Positions 3,420 to 61,073 of a stretch of 64,000 bases of DNA are shown here, in pieces. The stretch is from the NCBI GenBank assembly GCA_053919585.1, contig CM132787.1; one strand, 5' to 3'. Source of the stretch: Euprymna scolopes (taxonomy: Eukaryota). The notes below the pieces were generated by a model that searched no databases, had not been told where the DNA came from, and saw nothing but the letters and a program-made list of their open reading frames with translations. Numbering within the stretch: position 1 is the stretch's first letter; every line of letters begins with the position of its first letter. The position numbers and the translations under genes are program-made.

Positions 3420-4420
3420 ATCTATGTTCCGTGTTGGGCGCCCAGTACGCAAAATTACTACGGAATACGAGAATAAACAAAATAAACACACTTCCGAATA
3501 TCTGTTACAAGCCCTGTTAAAACAGCAAACAGAAAGATGGATGGACGTGATAGAAAATGGAGACCTTACTCGATGCAGGCGACCTTTCTGGCGCACGATC
3601 AAAAAACTAGATCCTGAAAAGTCGAACCCCAAATCAGCATTACCGATAGGAACTGACAGAATTACACAATACCTTAGATCCATGAAGCAAATCCCAGACA
3701 ATAACTTAGACAGCTCTATCATGAGGAATCTTAAACAAACCCTAAGAACGCCATCAGCGTGGAACCGTACCCTAAATGCACACATACCACCCACAGAATT
3801 AAAAAAAAAATCAACAACAAACAATATGGCAAAGCCTCAGGTGTGGATGGGCTTTTCTCGATATGATCACGAACCTTGACATCATTGACTTCACAGATCA
3901 CCTCTCACTACTGGAGACACACCAAAATAATAGCAGTTCTTCGAGGCCGGAAAACGAGCTTATGGGCTAGCAAGCTACAATGCTGTCTCTCTACTAAGTT
4001 TCCTCTACAAACTACTAGAGAGAATCAACCTGACAAGACAGGCTCACTTCCTAAACTTACGTATCTCAAAACAATAAGCTTCGGGCAGAATAAAATAAAA
4101 TAAGATTGCCAAAAGACACAACTACATAAAAATGTAGCCGTAACGCGGTTGGGAGTATTCAAAACCGTACTCATAATAACAAATTGGACACTGCTACAGT
4201 GCTGCAAAATATTGCGCCCTAGTATGGTCTCGGAGCTAACACACAATATAAATTGGAAATAAAATCAGAGAAACTATGCATATTACCTCAACATGTCTGA
4301 AGTCAACCCCAACACAATGGCTATTAATAGCAAACTCAATCGCACGACCCCACATAAGGAGGGAAGAGGTAATTCAAAAACGGATTCAAAGCATCAAAAA
4401 CACACCAGGGACTTAACAAG
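3420..4420 (+). mobile_element. Degenerate LINE ORF2 fragment (Ingi/Jockey-group-like)
   Basis: ORF 3424-3879 has the pre-RT segment ERWMDVIENGDLTRCRRPFWRTIKKLDP, followed by frameshifted RT-entry-like sequence (WRHTKIIAVL); many stops. Confidence 0.45.
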
Positions 4421-5503
4421 CCAACATTTTAAAGGTTCTCCAACTCGCCCATACTGAAGTCCCCAACGCCGATATACAACTGAAAAATGTTTGATTCCTT
4501 CTTTTTGAACTGTTTATGTTGCTTGTCATGATATTTACAAAACCCCACCGTTCTGCCGTTCTGACACCAGCTTTAAAGAAGCTCCTCATCAGCGTATGGC
4601 AACATATTTATCACACCCGGTGCGTTTTTCTTCTCTCATCATGCTGGCATCGCCAGCCATTTTTCGCCTTCGACTTTACATATTCATCTTCCCTTGGAAC
4701 GAACTTGGCTTCCCTTAACCTCATGCTTGCATTAGCCAGGAATTTCTCGCCTTCCATTTTACACCTCTATCTTCTTCGACGCAGACTTTGTTCTCCCCAT
4801 GATTCCGTGGAGTATTATTTCTGTTTTTTCTTCTAAGCAAGCCCGCGCATATTTCCCAATCAACATAGGTGTTTTTTTCAGTTACTGTTGCTAATATCTT
4901 GGCAAGACATTAAGCTCCTGTTGATATTTGTACAATGGGCTGATACGCGCACCGCCTAAGTGACACATTATTTGTGTTTCTTACGTAAACTGCTACCAAC
5001 ATATAATGCAACAATTATTGCATTTCTCTTTTTGTCGCAATGCTTTCTGTATTTCGGTGGTAGCCAATCGATAATTTTGTTTATTCACTTACTACTTTTA
5101 CTTTCATTAAATATTTTGTTTGTAAACTTTAATCATTAGACGCTTCGTAACGAACTTGCGTTTAATGTTTATTGCTCATAGATATGTTACATTCGATCAC
5201 TAGGAAATCTGATTTGTTGTTCGAATTCCCCCACACAAGTTCGTTTCAATTAAGAACAAACTCGTTACACACATATTTCCTTTATCCGAGGATTCTGTTG
5301 AGCTTTCGGGTGAACGGAACCTAGGTATTTCTACTGAGAAATAATCAATAGACGAATATAATCAATAGACTAATAGTTATAATTACAATAAATTATTTTG
5401 AGTTACAAAGAAATTAAAGAGTAATGTTCAAAGGATGTGTTCATTAAAAAGAGGTTAATCTCACTTGGACTATTTTTGGTTCATAATAGGGTAGAGATTT
5501 ATT

Positions 5504-6180
5504 TGCTGCCCACCTAAGCAAAATGTGGCACAAGGCCGGAAAGTGGGAAACCAGCAGGCTCCCCTAAAGAAGGGGTACTCCTGCAATTGTAAAAATTGCC
5601 TGAGTAACCCCGTCGGCATTCCCCGGTCGGGCGCCTCAGGCAGTAAGCAATGAACTGACTCAAGCCTCAGTCAAACAGGTGTTGGGCCGGTTCCGGCCCC
5701 TCACCTGTTGGGGTGAGGGTCAAGTGACGAATCATTGACGAGTACTTCTACCCTGTATCCCTGCAGCTGAAGCCGCTAGGAGACACATCCCATCATGAGA
5801 GATTCCTAATGGGGTATATATTTAAATGCTGCCCATATCAGCATTATGTCGCACAAGGCCGGAAAGTGGGAACCCCGCAGGCTCCCCTAAAGAAGGGGCA
5901 CTCCTGCAATTTTAATAATTGCCTGAGTAACCCCGTCGGAATTCTCCGGTCGGAGCGCCTCAGGAAGCAAGCAATAAACTTGCCCCACCGGTAAGCACCG
6001 GTGGCAAGGCCTGGGAGGGTGGACGGCGTCCAACAGGTGCTGGGCCGGGTCCCGGCCTCTCGCCTGTTGGGCGGAGTGTCAACTGACGAATCCTTGATGT
6101 GTACAACCCTATCGCCCTGCAGTCGAAGCCGCAAGGAGACACATCCCATCATACAAGGTTGTATAATGGGGTATCCTCCC
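5504..6180. repeat. Two diverged tandem copies (5504-5826, 5827-~6180) of a GC-rich, hairpin-dense ~325-355 bp unit; putative structured-RNA element
   Basis: Both copies start tgctgccca and share gcacaaggccggaaagtgggaa, gcaggctcccctaaagaagggg, cctgagtaaccccgtcgg, aacaggtg..ggccgg..ccggcc..cctgtt and ggagacacatcccatcat..aatgggg; at least six stem-loops per unit. Confidence 0.85.
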
Positions 6181-6799
6181 TGAAAGTTGGGGTATTCTAT
6201 TTATGAACACTGACGATAGAAACTGACTAATCAAAATCATTTACGTTCTATTATCAACCAATCAGAAATCAGAATTGCTCCATAAGAATTGACTCTTTTA
6301 AGCATTCCAGCAAATATTTCTTCGTGTCAACACAATATTGATCTTTTGTACTTTGTTTGCAAAATTCTAATTTCCAGAACATGTACAGAACACCGAGCCA
6401 CTAAATTCATCCTATCAAGAACTTGTATTGAATGGCAACTTACCGGATAAACTTCTGAAATTAAACATCGCTTTTAATTACAAATGGGCCAAACGGGAGA
6501 CTTTACTTCGATGGATCTGTATCAAAATTCGAATTGTACAAAAGTAATTAAGATACAGAAATAGTCCTGAATCTATTGTAACTGTCTTTGAGGAATTAAT
6601 AAAATGCTAAGATGAAAGTAGCCTATATTTGGTAATGTGAGAAGCCTTTTACGATGGCTGCAAGAATATTATAAGAGAGAATTAGTTATCGAAAGGAAAA
6701 ACTGAAAATCATTTCTTTATATACTTAACTCTCATCTTTAAAACGGGCAAAAGCCGAGCCGATTACACATTGTATTATAAGAGCCGAAACAATAGCAAA

Positions 6800-7330
6800 T
6801 TAATTAAAAATATCTGGCGAATTTTTTACCGTTAGTCTCCATGATATTAAAGGGTACCGAGTGGTTTGAAGCCGTTTACGATAGTAAGACCTCAAAAACA
6901 ACACAACAAAACAAAATAGTCGTTTCAACGTAGCATTAAGGAGCTAAGAGGAACCTAAGAAAATTATTACAGAAATAAAAATCTAATCTACTATAAAATT
7001 AAAAAATGGCCACTTACAAGAATCAAAATAAAATAATACCTTTACCTCGATTAAAAGCTGCAACATTTCCAAAAACAAAGAATAGAACAAACATTATTTA
7101 CTATAAGTGTGGACACACCAATCATATGAAAAAGACCGAATTCAAACTCCCCTGAAGAAAACTATTTATACACGCTCGAAATGATAAAACGGCAGGTCTG
7201 TATATCGAAGAAGAAACAGAAAAATAATTTAAAGAAAACCATGTCGTTCGCTCCTTGGAATCTAGCTGTTGACAACTCTTATATTCGTTGCTGTCTTTTT
7301 AGTAGTATCCCTCTCGTCTTTCAGCGTGTT
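6800..7330 (+). mobile_element. Highly degenerate gag-like remnant
   Basis: Decayed zinc knuckle YKCGHTNHMKK near 7100; no ORF remains. Confidence 0.25.
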
Positions 7331-10713: not shown

Positions 10714-10946
10714 TCGTAATATTTTAATACCGTGGTGAGATTGGAGGCACCGCGNNNNNNNNNNNNNNNNNNNNNNNNNNNNNNNNNNNNNNNNNNNNNN
10801 NNNNNNNNNNNNNNNNNNNNNNNNNNNNNNNNNNNNNNNNNNNNNNNNNNNNNNNNNNNNNNNNNNNNNNNNNNNNNNNNNNNNNNNNNNNNNNNNNNNN
10901 NNNCAGCACGGCGCCGTGAATCTCATCACGGTATTAAAATTTACGA
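10714..10946. mobile_element. MITE-like inverted repeat spanning an N gap
   Basis: tcgtaatattttaataccgtggtgagatt (10714-10742) versus aatctcatcacggtattaaaatttacga (10919-10946); the interior is mostly Ns. Confidence 0.5.
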
Positions 10947-58079: not shown

Positions 58080-61073
58080 TTAAATGGTTAAATAATGCCG
58101 TGCCTTCGAAACCACAATCTATGAAGCATTCTTTCGTAAAAGTATTAAAAAGAAAAAAAAGAATTGAGTACTAAGCCCACGCATTCACTAACATCCATGG
58201 GCTTAGAACTAATTTAGCTGATATTGAAGCATTTCTTCTAACAAATACCCCGGATATATTAGGACTAAGCGAGATTAACCTACACTCCTCCATCCACTCT
58301 AACTACTTTAACATGCCTGGATATCTCCCACTCTGCCGAAAGGACTCTGACAGACATATGCACGGACTTAGAGTCTACATTCGTAACACCCTCCCCCTAA
58401 CTAGAGAAACTAACCTAGAAACGGACGATCCAGCCTTTATGTGCTTTAGACTAAACATACAACACTTTTATTTTATCTACCGCTCTCCCTCGACCCAGGA
58501 CTGCACGATAGTAAACAAAGTCTCTGACAGTATACACACAGCATTCTCCCTCAACACTAGCGCACAAGTACATGTATTTGGTGACTTTAATGTTCACCAA
58601 AAAAACTAGCTTGGATTCTCTGACCACACAGATGCAGCGGGCAGCACAACACATAGTTTTGCTATATCTCACTCCCTATCACAAATAGTTACGTTTCCAA
58701 CCCGTTTCCCTGACCAGCAAGAACAACAAGCATCACTTCTAGATCTGTTTCTGATTGCAGTTCCCGAGGATTGTACAACAGATGCTGACAGCCCACTCGG
58801 GAACGCTGACCATGCAGTGATAATGGTAGAAATCGCCCTAAATTCTAGACCCAAAACTGAAGAGTCAGTGCTCAAAACAACGAGATATTATAATAAGGCT
58901 GACTGGGAAGCCATTATAGATCTTAACAGAGATGCCCCATGGGAAAATATTTTTCTCTTCCTGCTGAACAGTGCGCAAATGAGACCACTGAATGGTTCAA
59001 AACAGCAATGGAAGCACATGTTCCCATGCGGAAATTTTATAGCAAACCCCACTCTCCCCAATGTTTTACTTCGACTTGCGAAACTGTCATTGCTCTAAGG
59101 CAGCATGCATACCGCAGATTTAACCGACATAATTCCAGTTAAAATAAACAGAAGTATATAGAAGCTAGAAATAACGTTAAGAAAGAAATAGCGACAGCCA
59201 AGAGAGAATTTACTGAAACCACTAAAAAACGCATCGAAGCACAAAAATTAGCCAATCGTGACTTCTGGAAAATCTACAGCAGTGTAGTAAATAATGGGCA
59301 ATCAACAATTGCCCCGCTACCAACAATCACGAGGTTGTTTGCTCAGCAACCGACAAGGCTAATATGCTTGCCAGCCGGTTTGCCTCAAACTCCACACTGG
59401 ACCCTTCCAACCACCCCCTACCTGACTTTCCTTTGCGGACAGACGCCACACTAGATGATCTAAAATTCACCCCTGCTCAGGTACATACTATCATAAAAAC
59501 ATTGACACTTCAAAAGCATGTGGATCTGATCTCATCCCAGCTGTGCTATTAAAAAAGTACTCAGCGGGAGTAGCTCCAGTTCTCTCCAAACTCTACAACA
59601 AATGCCTTAATTAATCCTGCTTTCCGGGCTATTGGAAAACTGTTTCTGTGGTACCAATATTCAAGAATTCTGGCGAAAGAACTGACCCATCAAATTATCG
59701 CCCCATCAGCCTCCTCCCACTTTTCGCCAAAATATTTGAAACCATAATAAACCATGCTCTAGTCCAGCACCTTACAGATACTAAACTTCTGACTGGCAAC
59801 AATATGGATTTAGACAAGCCCGTTCCACAGCGTACATCCTCACTGTAATCTCTGAACGTATATAACATTCACTGGACAAAGCGGGGGAGGGCAGAGCGGT
59901 AGCTCTAGATATAGCTAAGGCTTTTGTCAGGGTGTGGCATGAGGGTCTCCTCAGGAAAATCAGATCATACGGTGTCCCTGGTAGAATACTTAGCATAATT
60001 GAATCCTTCTTAGATAAGAGAAAAATCCAGATTGTCCTCTACGGTCGTACATCTAAACAGTGTGATATAAATGCGAGAGTGCCTCAGGGGTCTATTGTTG
60101 GACCTCTATTGTTCCTGATATTTATTAATGACCTCCCCGACAAAACTGCCTCTGAGGTGGGTATATATTTTGATGACACTACACTCTATTACAGGCATGA
60201 TAGGAAAAGAAATGAACACATATCTAAAGAAATGGCAAAAACACAAGAGGATGACCTCCAATCTGTAGTGGAATGGGGGCATAAATTGATGGTCACATTC
60301 AATGCTGCCAAGACTAAACTTGTTTCCTTCAATAATTACAAGAAACCTTCTCTGCTACCAATAGCAATGGCCAGTGACTCCCTGTCTGAGAGTACATCTT
60401 TCAAACTGCTTGGCCTAACGTTCACAGGAAACATGAGCTGGAACAATTATATTTAAAACATTGCCAGGGCTGCTGCGAAAAGGGTAGGCTCTCTCTACCG
60501 TGCTAGAAAACTACTGACACCTGAAAGTATCCTGCACCTCTATAAAGCGATCATTCGCCCTTGTATGGAGTATTGTTGTCACATTTGGGCTGGTGCATCT
60601 GCTACTAGTCTCTCGCTCCTAGACAAAGTTCAACAAAGAGTCACAAATCTGATAGCATCTATGTTTCAGCCTCTGTCCCATCGACGAAATGTTCCATCCC
60701 TCTGCTTGTTCTACAAGTATTTTAATGGTGAATCCTCTGACAGACTGCAGACACTTGTGTCCCCACGACGTAGACACCTTCGACAACCCCGACAGGCAGC
60801 TAAATCCCACCCCCACACACTAGAGATCCCTTGATGTAAAAGATCTTTCTACTCTAGTAGTTTCTTCCCCAAAACTGTTAGACTCTGGAATTCCATTCCA
60901 TGTTCCTGCTTCCCTAACTGTACTGGCATGCAGAAGTTCAAGTGTAACGTGAACCGACATCTTGCTGCCCAAATCCCTACATAGTGCCCCAGTAGTTGCT
61001 GCCCCTGATAGTAGCCCCGTACACCAAAGTAGCAATGTGCCTTATTTGAGGTGAAAATGTAATAAAAAAAAAA
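58080..61073 (+). mobile_element. Decayed CR1-group LINE, same family as 38935-41836
   Basis: FTNIHGLRTN, YRSPS, FGDFNVH, NYRPISLLP, VPQGSIVGPLLFLIFINDL, YFDDTT, MEYCCHIWAGA; same 3' tail as the first copy. Confidence 0.92.

What the first reader, a model, noticed from the sequence alone, without database searches (positions are those of the whole stretch)
5504..6180. Unrecognised, hairpin-dense GC-rich tandem unit with stems conserved over loops
Seen: two diverged head-to-tail copies keep their stems while loops change: gcaatt-gtaaa-aattgc versus gcaatt-ttaat-aattgc; ggccgg-tt-ccggcc versus ggccggg-t-cccggcc inside aacaggtg/c(a,g)cctgtt; cccatcat...aatggg with different interiors. One position carries unrelated hairpins in the two copies (tgact..agtca versus cttgcc..accggt-aagc-accggt-ggcaag). 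A possible pseudoknot pairs CCCA(C) in the TGCT/AGCA loop with GTGGG. There are no Pol III boxes, no credible ORF and no complete known ribozyme. Wobble pairs do not settle the strand: the terminal hairpin favours minus, another favours plus. Inference: a mobile structured RNA, either SINE-like or retrozyme-like with an unrecognised processing motif. Unit size and tandem layout parallel the hammerhead repeat at 33.4 kb.
Basis: partly seen in the sequence, partly recalled or inferred. Interest (0 to 1): 0.72.

Follow-up and report, generated by a model that had tools for sequence, protein, structure and literature searches.

The report
Site-homing SINE-like retroposon in copia LTR
The two GC-rich, hairpin-packed units are two separate insertions of a short non-coding jumping element that lands repeatedly at one short site inside the end-repeat (LTR) of a copia-type retrotransposon of a mollusc; it is a real, structured mobile RNA, but a variant of a kind already described, not a new ribozyme.

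Summary
There are two head-to-tail units, 85% alike, far more hairpin-rich than shuffles (z -6 to -8.5). Across 72 genomic copies several stems are kept by paired changes.

The units are not a free-standing tandem RNA gene or a retrozyme. They lie in the U3 part of an old, truncated Ty1/copia 5' LTR (about 5463-6479, + strand). Each unit is bounded by a copy of the target TAATGGGGTA.

The units are younger than their host: 87-90% identity to other copies, against 70-74% for the LTR tail and gag. They share almost no private mutations, so they are two sequential insertions, not a local duplication.

Elsewhere in this 5.9-Gb genome the unit (at least 10,000 copies) also sits outside LTRs. There it has 10-21-bp target duplications, a clean filled/empty site, one fixed end and one truncated end. 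That is the mark of target-primed retroposition of the minus-strand RNA.

No ribozyme, tRNA head or ORF was found. The LINE partner and RNA evidence could not be tested here. Earlier notes of this scan report the same element elsewhere in this genome, with a Tx1 LINE partner.

The closest published parallel is SINEU-3/Tx1-Mar in crocodilians. Verdict: a new variant of a known kind, of moderate interest.

The parts
5463..6479 (+). Host: old 5' LTR of a truncated Ty1/copia retrotransposon. Boundaries are approximate. The units below are insertions in its U3.
   Evidence: The head at 5463-5479 aligns to the LTR start of family members, and the tail at 6174-6479 aligns at 70% to the L049 LTR tail. 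LTR status of the family rests on an LTR pair, PPT, PBS and 5-bp target duplications.
5478..5493 (+). Target-site copy 1 (16 nt; core TAATAGGGTA at 5484-5493).
   Evidence: Direct repeats flank units in other LTRs.
5494..5800 (-). Retroposon copy 1 (307 nt; sense inferred as minus strand). It lacks the ~64-nt middle segment of most copies.
   Evidence: It carries 14 private rare variants, only 1 of them shared with copy 2.
5494..5537 (-). 3' tail module of copy 1: A-rich end (5494-5503), terminal hairpin H1 (5503-5521), 11-nt motif GGCCTTGTGCC (5527-5537).
   Evidence: Motif. Four H1 pairs covary in the family. The same module is found in repeat family Y, with a compensated stem.
5801..5816 (+). 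Target-site copy 2 (core TAATGGGGTA at 5807-5816), between the two units.
5817..6156 (-). Retroposon copy 2 (340 nt), from a different sub-lineage (H1 closing pair A-T instead of T-A; partial middle segment). Its tail module is at 5817-5860.
   Evidence: It carries 25 private rare variants.
6157..6173 (+). Target-site copy 3 (core TAATGGGGTA at 6164-6173).
6198..6207 (.). TATA-like box of the LTR (TATTTATGAA), 24 nt from target copy 3. A CCAAT lies at 6258-6262. Read on the minus strand the order is CCAAT, TATA, about 30 nt, then the target and unit.
   Evidence: Read from the sequence. The same layout is seen in other LTR types. Promoter use is inferred, not shown.
6480..6494 (+). Decayed primer-binding site (complement of the anticodon stem-loop of initiator tRNA-Met in intact relatives).
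   Evidence: The window copy was read.
6580..7125 (+). Decayed copia gag remnant (many stops and frameshifts); the element ends after the zinc knuckle.
   Evidence: tblastn against the L049 gag-pol frame, DNA identity of 74%, and no closer relative than 74% in the genome.

Best explanation
The region holds two independent insertions of a 310-385-nt non-coding, hairpin-rich, promoter-less SINE-like retroposon. I infer that its RNA sense is the window's minus strand.

The element ends in a tail module: an 11-nt motif GGCCUUGUGCC, a short hairpin kept by compensatory changes, and an A-rich AAAUAAAUA end without poly(A). I infer that a LINE reverse transcriptase takes this tail as its handle. Earlier notes of this scan name a Tx1-type LINE; I did not test that.

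The element is copied by target-primed reverse transcription into a preferred site (minus strand WACCCCAUUA, plus strand TAATGGGGTA). This site lies in the U3 of Ty1/copia LTRs, about 24 nt from the LTR's TATA box.

Each insertion leaves a copy of the target at both of its ends. Further copies can therefore land beside the first and build head-to-tail arrays, from 0 to more than 20 units. LTRs that carry units can also be multiplied by copia itself.

Shown here: the host, the target copies, target duplications and an empty site outside LTRs, one fixed and one truncated end, units younger than their host, and covariation.

Inferred: the strand of the RNA, the LINE partner, and transcription from the LTR's TATA read in reverse.
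For: Host:
- The flanks of the unit are conserved LTR sequence.
- Locus L049 has two LTRs (94.9% alike) with a polypurine tract, a PBS complementary to 15 nt of tRNAiMet, and the domain order gag / zf-CCHC / protease region / integrase / RVT_2.
- Solo LTRs have perfect 5-bp duplications.

Empty sites:
- All 5 gag-selected LTRs that I read out, and 13 of 29 LTR heads, run from the target straight into the LTR tail.

Mobility apart from copia:
- In L072 a truncated unit sits in a 183-nt repeat with a 21-bp duplication, and the neighbouring repeat is the exact empty site.
- Other duplications: L081 17 bp, L076 18 bp, L074 10 bp.
- The end GATATTTATT|TGCTGCC is fixed. The other end stops at unit positions 236, 320, 328 or about 370.

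Age:
- Window units are 87-90% identical to L049 units, but the LTR tail is 70% and gag 74%, with many stops.
- Across LTR types, units are 88.8% alike and tails 70.9%.
- The two window units share 1 rare variant out of 14 and 25.

Tail and structure:
- Repeat Y has the same tail module with a compensated hairpin.
- Four pairs of the terminal hairpin covary.

Abundance: 10,491 hits of a core 24-mer.

Published parallel: SINEU-3/Tx1-Mar, with tandem insertions sandwiching a 16-bp duplication, and Tx1 families that target LTR retrotransposons (PMC4494074).
Against: - No LINE with this tail was seen in the DNA I hold.
- Inside LTRs, the flanking repeats could also arise from unequal crossing-over of an intrinsic repeat.
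- Two truncated copies outside LTRs show no clear duplication (L013, L026).
- Wobble pairs do not favour the minus strand (241 against 218).
- The Fisher tests on covariation are not corrected for the relatedness of the copies.
Confidence: 0.68

Rival explanations
1. The unit is an intrinsic, variable-number tandem repeat of the copia LTR's U3. It would act as an enhancer-like or 3'-UTR RNA module, such as an export or stability element. It would be multiplied only by copia and by unequal recombination or reverse-transcriptase slippage. Copies outside LTRs would be occasional captures by other elements.
For: - Most sampled units lie in LTRs at one fixed position, bounded by head and tail.
- Copy number differs between the two LTRs of one element (L049: 1 and 2 units).
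- L033 has 11 units with a higher-order period, which points to local duplication.
- U3 is part of the copia 3' UTR, so hairpins could serve copia RNA.
- Three earlier notes of this scan read it this way.
Against: - It does not explain units that are much younger than their host LTR and gag in the window.
- It does not explain units 88.8% alike across LTR types whose tails are 70.9% alike.
- It does not explain the clean filled/empty site with a 21-bp duplication in an unrelated repeat, or the 17-bp duplication in L081.
- It does not explain the fixed-end, truncated-end pattern.
- It does not explain why the window's two units share no private mutations and belong to different sub-lineages.
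- Only about 2 of some 21 gag-selected copia 5' LTRs carry a unit.
Confidence: 0.2
2. It is a retrozyme-like or viroid-like element. The tandem units would be transcribed, cut by an unrecognised self-cleaving motif and circularised, then copied back into DNA by a Penelope-like or other reverse transcriptase.
For: - Unit size and head-to-tail layout resemble metazoan retrozymes.
- The fold is very stable on both strands.
- A hammerhead repeat exists at 33.4 kb in the same window.
Against: - No hammerhead, twister, HDV-like, hairpin, pistol or hatchet match on either strand, even at E up to 5-10.
- Arrays are explained by target-site copies at every junction.
- Single copies with target duplications and truncation at one end fit linear-template retroposition.
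- Neighbouring units in an array differ in age and lineage.
Confidence: 0.04
3. The hairpins are DNA-level palindromic binding sites for transcription factors (for example the paired E-boxes CAGGTG/CACCTG), so the region would be a composite enhancer.
For: - The units lie just upstream of the LTR TATA box on the copia strand.
- Several stems are perfect palindromes, including two E-boxes.
Against: - Paired, pair-keeping substitutions with no intermediate states fit base pairing, not half-site recognition.
- Copies retropose on their own to places without a promoter.
Confidence: 0.05

Closest known systems
SINEU-3 with Tx1-Mar LINEs of crocodilians (Kojima 2015, PMC4494074)
   Same: - A non-autonomous retroposon without a classical internal Pol III head.
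- A strong preference for one site in another transposon.
- Target duplications of about 16 bp, and frequent 5' truncation.
- Tandem copies 'sandwiching a TSD' that come from sequential insertions.
- Some Tx1 families in that study prefer LTR retrotransposons.
   Different: - No snRNA-derived head.
- The body is about 380 nt of conserved hairpins.
- The target lies in a Ty1/copia LTR, 24 nt from its TATA box.
- Arrays reach more than 20 units, and unit-bearing LTRs are also multiplied by copia.
- The LINE partner was not shown here.
Stringent-type LINE/SINE pairs that share a 3' stem-loop tail (Kajikawa and Okada 2002, as cited in PMC4494074)
   Same: The fixed 3' end has a short conserved motif and a hairpin whose stem is kept by compensatory changes. 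There is no poly(A). The tail is shared between different short families (unit and repeat Y).
   Different: Sharing of the tail with a LINE was not tested here. I know the named example (UnaL2/UnaSINE1) from memory only.
U3 tandem repeats of LTR retroelements (enhancer repeats; structured U3/R export elements of retroviruses)
   Same: Position in U3 upstream of the TATA box, variable copy number, and presence in the element's 3' UTR.
   Different: These units have their own insertion history, with target duplications outside LTRs, and are younger than the host LTR. The comparison with retroviral elements rests on my own knowledge and was not tested.
Metazoan retrozymes (hammerhead-bearing tandem repeats)
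   Same: Size, tandem layout, and a non-coding, highly paired RNA.
   Different: No self-cleaving motif was found. Junctions are target-site copies.

Membership tests
SINE in the broad sense (LINE-dependent non-autonomous retroposon) | Insertions flanked by target-site duplications of variable length | tested here: met
   Duplications of 21, 18, 17 and 10 bp outside copia LTRs, with an exact empty site for L072. Repeats of 10-16 bp flank the units in LTRs.
SINE in the broad sense (LINE-dependent non-autonomous retroposon) | Constant 3' end and variable 5' truncation | tested here: met
   One end is fixed in all contexts. The other ends at unit positions 236, 238, 320, 328 or about 370. That the fixed end is the 3' end is an inference.
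SINE in the broad sense (LINE-dependent non-autonomous retroposon) | 3' tail shared with an autonomous LINE of the same genome | not tested
   No LINE with the tail is in the loci I hold, and no further genome DNA could be fetched. Notes s1-295572 and s1-268955 claim a Tx1 partner. The tail is shared with short family Y.
SINE in the strict sense | Internal Pol III promoter head derived from tRNA, 7SL or 5S RNA | tested here: not met
   ARAGORN finds no tRNA-like head. Rfam gives no tRNA, 5S or 7SL match. Runs of four or five T lie inside the unit on both strands.
Retrozyme | Self-cleaving ribozyme (hammerhead) in each unit | tested here: not met
   No ribozyme family matches at E up to 10 in the window units or up to 5 in a well-kept copy, on either strand.
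Retrozyme | Unit-length circular RNA | not testable with these tools
Ty1/copia LTR retrotransposon (the host) | Two LTRs, 5-bp target duplication, PBS, polypurine tract | tested here: met
   L049 has an LTR pair at 94.9%, a PPT and a PBS. Solo LTRs have duplications CGCCC, GAACC, GCAGT and AAGAA. The PBS matches 15 nt of the anticodon stem-loop of tRNAiMet of this genome. In the window only the 5' LTR, a decayed PBS and a gag remnant are left.
Ty1/copia LTR retrotransposon (the host) | Domain order gag - protease - integrase - RT (RVT_2) | tested here: met
   Pfam on L049 gives Retrotran_gag_2, zf-CCHC, Pol_BBD, gag_pre-integrs, rve and SH3_retrovirus, then RVT_2.
Target-specific Tx1-type system (SINEU-3/Tx1-Mar type) | Preference for one site in another repeat, with sequential tandem insertions sandwiching the duplication | tested here: met
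   The same site is used in three LTR types, and similar WACCC-like sites elsewhere. Neighbouring units differ in lineage and age.
Target-specific Tx1-type system (SINEU-3/Tx1-Mar type) | A Tx1-clade LINE inserted at the same site | not tested
   Tx1-type ORF2 (zf-RVT) is abundant, with 22,411 first-look candidates and arrays of about 7.19-kb period. The loci could not be cut out.

The most novel reading that the evidence does not exclude
A promoter-less, highly structured retroposon that is a double parasite. It would use a LINE's reverse transcriptase to home to a site about 30 nt downstream of the copia LTR's TATA box read in reverse. Every new copy would then be born under a borrowed Pol II promoter and would carry a copy of the target as its leader. 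It would also ride inside the LTRs of active copia elements as a second way of spreading. Its conserved hairpins would serve recognition by the reverse transcriptase and the stability of the RNA.
Probability: 0.3. Interest if true: 0.6.

Novelty: new variant of a known kind. Interest (0 to 1): 0.4.

Why it matters
Published annotations of decapodiform cephalopod genomes report almost no SINEs and a large 'unclassified' repeat share (PMC13218726). This genome's size and contig count fit that group, which is an inference.

Elements like this one have at least 10,000 copies, no Pol III head, and hide inside LTRs. They would be part of that unclassified share and would be mistaken for LTR repeats or satellites.

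The case also shows how head-to-tail arrays can arise from repeated insertion at a target that each insertion rebuilds. It gives a natural set of compensatory variants of a retroposon tail hairpin that can be tested for recognition by its reverse transcriptase. If promoter borrowing and hitch-hiking on copia hold, it is a neat example of one mobile element exploiting two others.

Tried and rejected
- Tandem Repeats Finder did not report the pair.
- Rfam at gathering scores and at permissive E-values gave only noise on the window units and on a well-kept copy. ARAGORN found no tRNA-like part.
- RNAalifold on 53 copies gave a poor consensus because decayed copies break pairs. I counted pairs on the fold of one real copy instead.
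- Wobble-pair asymmetry did not settle the strand.
- The pseudoknot columns are nearly invariant, so there is no test.
- My first reading, an intrinsic U3 repeat of the copia LTR, was downgraded after a random sample of unit loci.
- No LINE carrying the tail is in the 82 loci I hold.
- Full-text search for the 11-nt motif found only unrelated primers.
- The bacterial promoter/terminator scan is not relevant to this genome.
The consensus line that DNA alignment printed was not used.

Full report
**What is there**

Window 5504-6180 holds two head-to-tail units of a GC-rich sequence. They align at 85% column identity. At one place copy 2 has about 34 more bases and copy 1 has a different short hairpin. 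Tandem Repeats Finder missed them because of these indels.

The stretch folds far better than shuffles:
- -285.2 against -236.95 +/- 7.85 kcal/mol, z -6.15;
- a better-kept genomic unit gives z -8.46 and -8.28 on the two strands.

Rfam finds nothing at gathering scores in the whole window and only noise at E up to 10 in the region. The same holds for a well-kept copy. There is no tRNA-like part and no credible ORF.

**The surroundings: a copia LTR**

The unit is abundant. A first look gave 2,688 candidates, and a core 24-mer has 10,491 hits with up to two mismatches.

The flanks of many copies are conserved beyond the unit. On the + strand they lead into a gag gene of the LTR-copia type.

Locus L049 shows a whole element:
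- two LTRs, 94.9% alike, with one and two units;
- a polypurine tract before the 3' LTR;
- a gag start codon inside the end of the LTR;
- the domain order gag, zinc knuckle, protease region, integrase, RVT_2.

The primer-binding site follows the LTR directly. It is the complement of 15 nt of the anticodon stem-loop of this genome's initiator tRNA-Met. From my own knowledge, this is the arrangement known from Drosophila copia.

Solo LTRs have perfect 5-bp duplications: CGCCC, GAACC, GCAGT and AAGAA.

In the window:
- the LTR runs from about 5463 to 6479;
- a decayed primer-binding site follows;
- a gag remnant lies at 6580-7125, full of stops and frameshifts.

The units lie in U3, upstream of the TATA-like box at 6198-6207.

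**Why it is not simply an LTR repeat**

Four results do not fit an intrinsic repeat.

1. Age. The window's units are 87-90% identical to those of L049. The LTR head is 75% identical, the LTR tail 70% and gag 74%. No genomic copy is closer than 74% to the gag remnant. Between LTR types, units are 88.8% alike and tails 70.9%.

2. Empty sites. All 5 gag-selected elements whose 5' LTR I read out, and 13 of 29 LTR heads in my loci, run from TAATGGGGTA straight into the LTR tail. Only about 2 of some 21 gag-selected 5' LTRs carry a unit.

3. Other contexts. A sample of 20 places taken from the first core-motif hits listed on contig 1 shows the unit in two further settings. One is a third, unalignable host with a TATA-like box at the same distance, where the period is 332 nt. 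The other is a set of unrelated sequences.
   - In L072 a truncated unit lies in a 183-nt repeat ('Y') with a 21-bp duplication. The neighbouring Y unit is the exact empty site.
   - L081 has a 17-bp duplication, L076 18 bp and L074 10 bp.
   - In all contexts one end is fixed (GATATTTATT|TGCTGCC on the + strand of the window). The other stops at unit positions 236, 238, 320, 328 or about 370.

4. The window's two units share 1 rare variant out of 14 and 25 private ones. They also differ at lineage-defining sites: the closing pair of the terminal hairpin and the middle segment.

Together these are the marks of target-primed retroposition of an RNA whose 3' end is the fixed end. That RNA is the minus strand of the window.

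**Anatomy on the minus strand**

Each copy ends in three parts: GGCCTTGTGCC (5527-5537 and, with one mismatch, 5850-5860), a 6-7-bp hairpin, and an A-rich end without poly(A).

Four pairs of that hairpin covary across the family with no mixed states:
- TA 42 / AT 29;
- TA 60 / AT 10;
- CG 67 / GC 2;
- TA 51 / CG 19.

Repeat family Y carries the same module with a stem changed on both sides.

Over all 100 local pairs of one real copy, 90.6% of cells in 72 copies are Watson-Crick. Nine pairs have double changes, against 5.1 +/- 0.7 (max 7) in shuffles and 1-6 with slid partners. These counts are not corrected for relatedness.

The proposed pseudoknot is built of invariant columns and stays open. 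Wobble pairs are balanced between the strands.

**The target and the arrays**

Copies of TAATGGGGTA stand at 5484-5493 (one mismatch), 5807-5816 and 6164-6173. That is before, between and after the units.

In other LTRs the six bases before this core differ from LTR to LTR, but are mostly the same at both ends of an array. Targets outside LTRs resemble the core (WACCC... on the minus strand).

Arrays hold units of different age and lineage. This fits sequential insertion at a site that each insertion rebuilds. Local duplication also occurs: L033 has 11 units with a five-unit higher-order period.

Both LTRs of L049 hold a unit with nearly the same junction. Copia therefore also multiplies units it carries.

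**How it most likely works**

Read on the minus strand, the LTR offers a CCAAT, then a TATA box, and about 30 nt later the target and the unit. Two further host types show the same spacing.

The element has no promoter of its own. A full-length copy outside any LTR (L081) starts with a short target-like leader.

I infer the following:
- source copies are transcribed from the LTR's TATA read in reverse;
- the RNA carries the target as leader;
- a LINE reverse transcriptase recognises the tail and primes at the target.

None of these three steps is shown.

Two tests could not be run. No LINE with this tail is in the loci I hold. Tx1-type ORF2 is abundant in the genome.

**Earlier notes of this scan (leads, not evidence)**

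After I had seen the duplications (my note), I found that the scan had met this element before on other DNA of this genome.
- Three follow-ups read it as a structured repeat inside a copia LTR.
- Two (s1-295572, s1-268955) read it as the short partner of an L1/Tx1-type LINE. They say the LINE shares its 3' end and homes to the same site.
- One (s1-279931) read a copy in a SINE as a capture.

My data agree with the second reading for everything except the LINE itself, which I could not test.

**Comparison with what is known**

Kojima (2015, PMC4494074) described SINEU-3 and Tx1-Mar in crocodilians. That system has a strong preference for one site in a Mariner transposon, a 16-bp duplication, 5' truncation and tandem copies 'sandwiching a TSD' from sequential insertions. 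Two Tx1 families there prefer LTR retrotransposons. The paper also discusses dependence on flanking transcription.

The present element works like that system. It differs in four ways:
- it has no snRNA head;
- it has a long body of conserved hairpins;
- its target lies beside a TATA box in a copia LTR;
- it also travels inside copia.

It fails the strict SINE test (no Pol III head) and the retrozyme test (no ribozyme).

**Verdict**

Noticed in passing
window 33392-34025 (minus strand motifs at 33423-33468 and 33768-33813): A 345-nt tandem repeat (1.8 copies, 98% alike) carries type I hammerhead motifs scoring 25.6 bits, below Rfam's gathering score of 34. It is already the subject of another finding of this scan.
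   Followed up: no
L072:1-1600 (G000:C1:22300823-22302423), also L068, L064, L076: Repeat family 'Y' is a 183-nt head-to-tail array of a hairpin-rich unit. It ends in the same tail module (GGCCTTGTGCC, hairpin, AAATAAATA) as the finding's unit and shares one inner hairpin with it. It is probably a sister family that stacks at its own target.
   Followed up: partly
L033:1768-2944 (G000:C3:143420000-143429999); L031:741-873: The U5 part of the copia LTR holds its own 64-nt tandem repeat, in 1-3 copies in most LTRs but about 18 copies in L033.
   Followed up: no
G000:C4:4110516-4126357 (L050-L052): A very long array of initiator tRNA-Met genes with a period of about 147 nt. The 23-nt anticodon-arm pattern has 1,563 hits in the genome, nearly all on one strand.
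   Followed up: partly
G000 e.g. C13:107133193-107205297, C11:49471938-49522462, C7:130898146-130948550: Tx1-type LINE ORF2 (zf-RVT domain, open frames of about 1,152 aa) stands in head-to-tail arrays with a period of about 7.19 kb, as expected for site-specific stacking. The DNA could not be fetched.
   Followed up: no
L016:1-1300 and L024:1-1300: Another element abuts the inferred 5' end of the unit. It ends in a 9-bp hairpin followed by an A-rich ...ACTAAATAT end, and it holds a short ORF with a CCHC zinc knuckle. It may be a further lodger at the same site.
   Followed up: partly
window about 10760-10900: A run of N (an assembly gap or masked stretch) shows as X in the ORF translations.
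   Followed up: no
window 3424-3879 (+) and 59866-60453 (+): Two open frames. The first resembles, from memory and untested, a LINE ORF2 fragment. The second has a LINE-type reverse transcriptase motif. Neither is adjacent to the finding or carries its tail.
   Followed up: no
window 34718-35185: A 32-nt tandem repeat of 14.6 copies, 88% alike.
   Followed up: no
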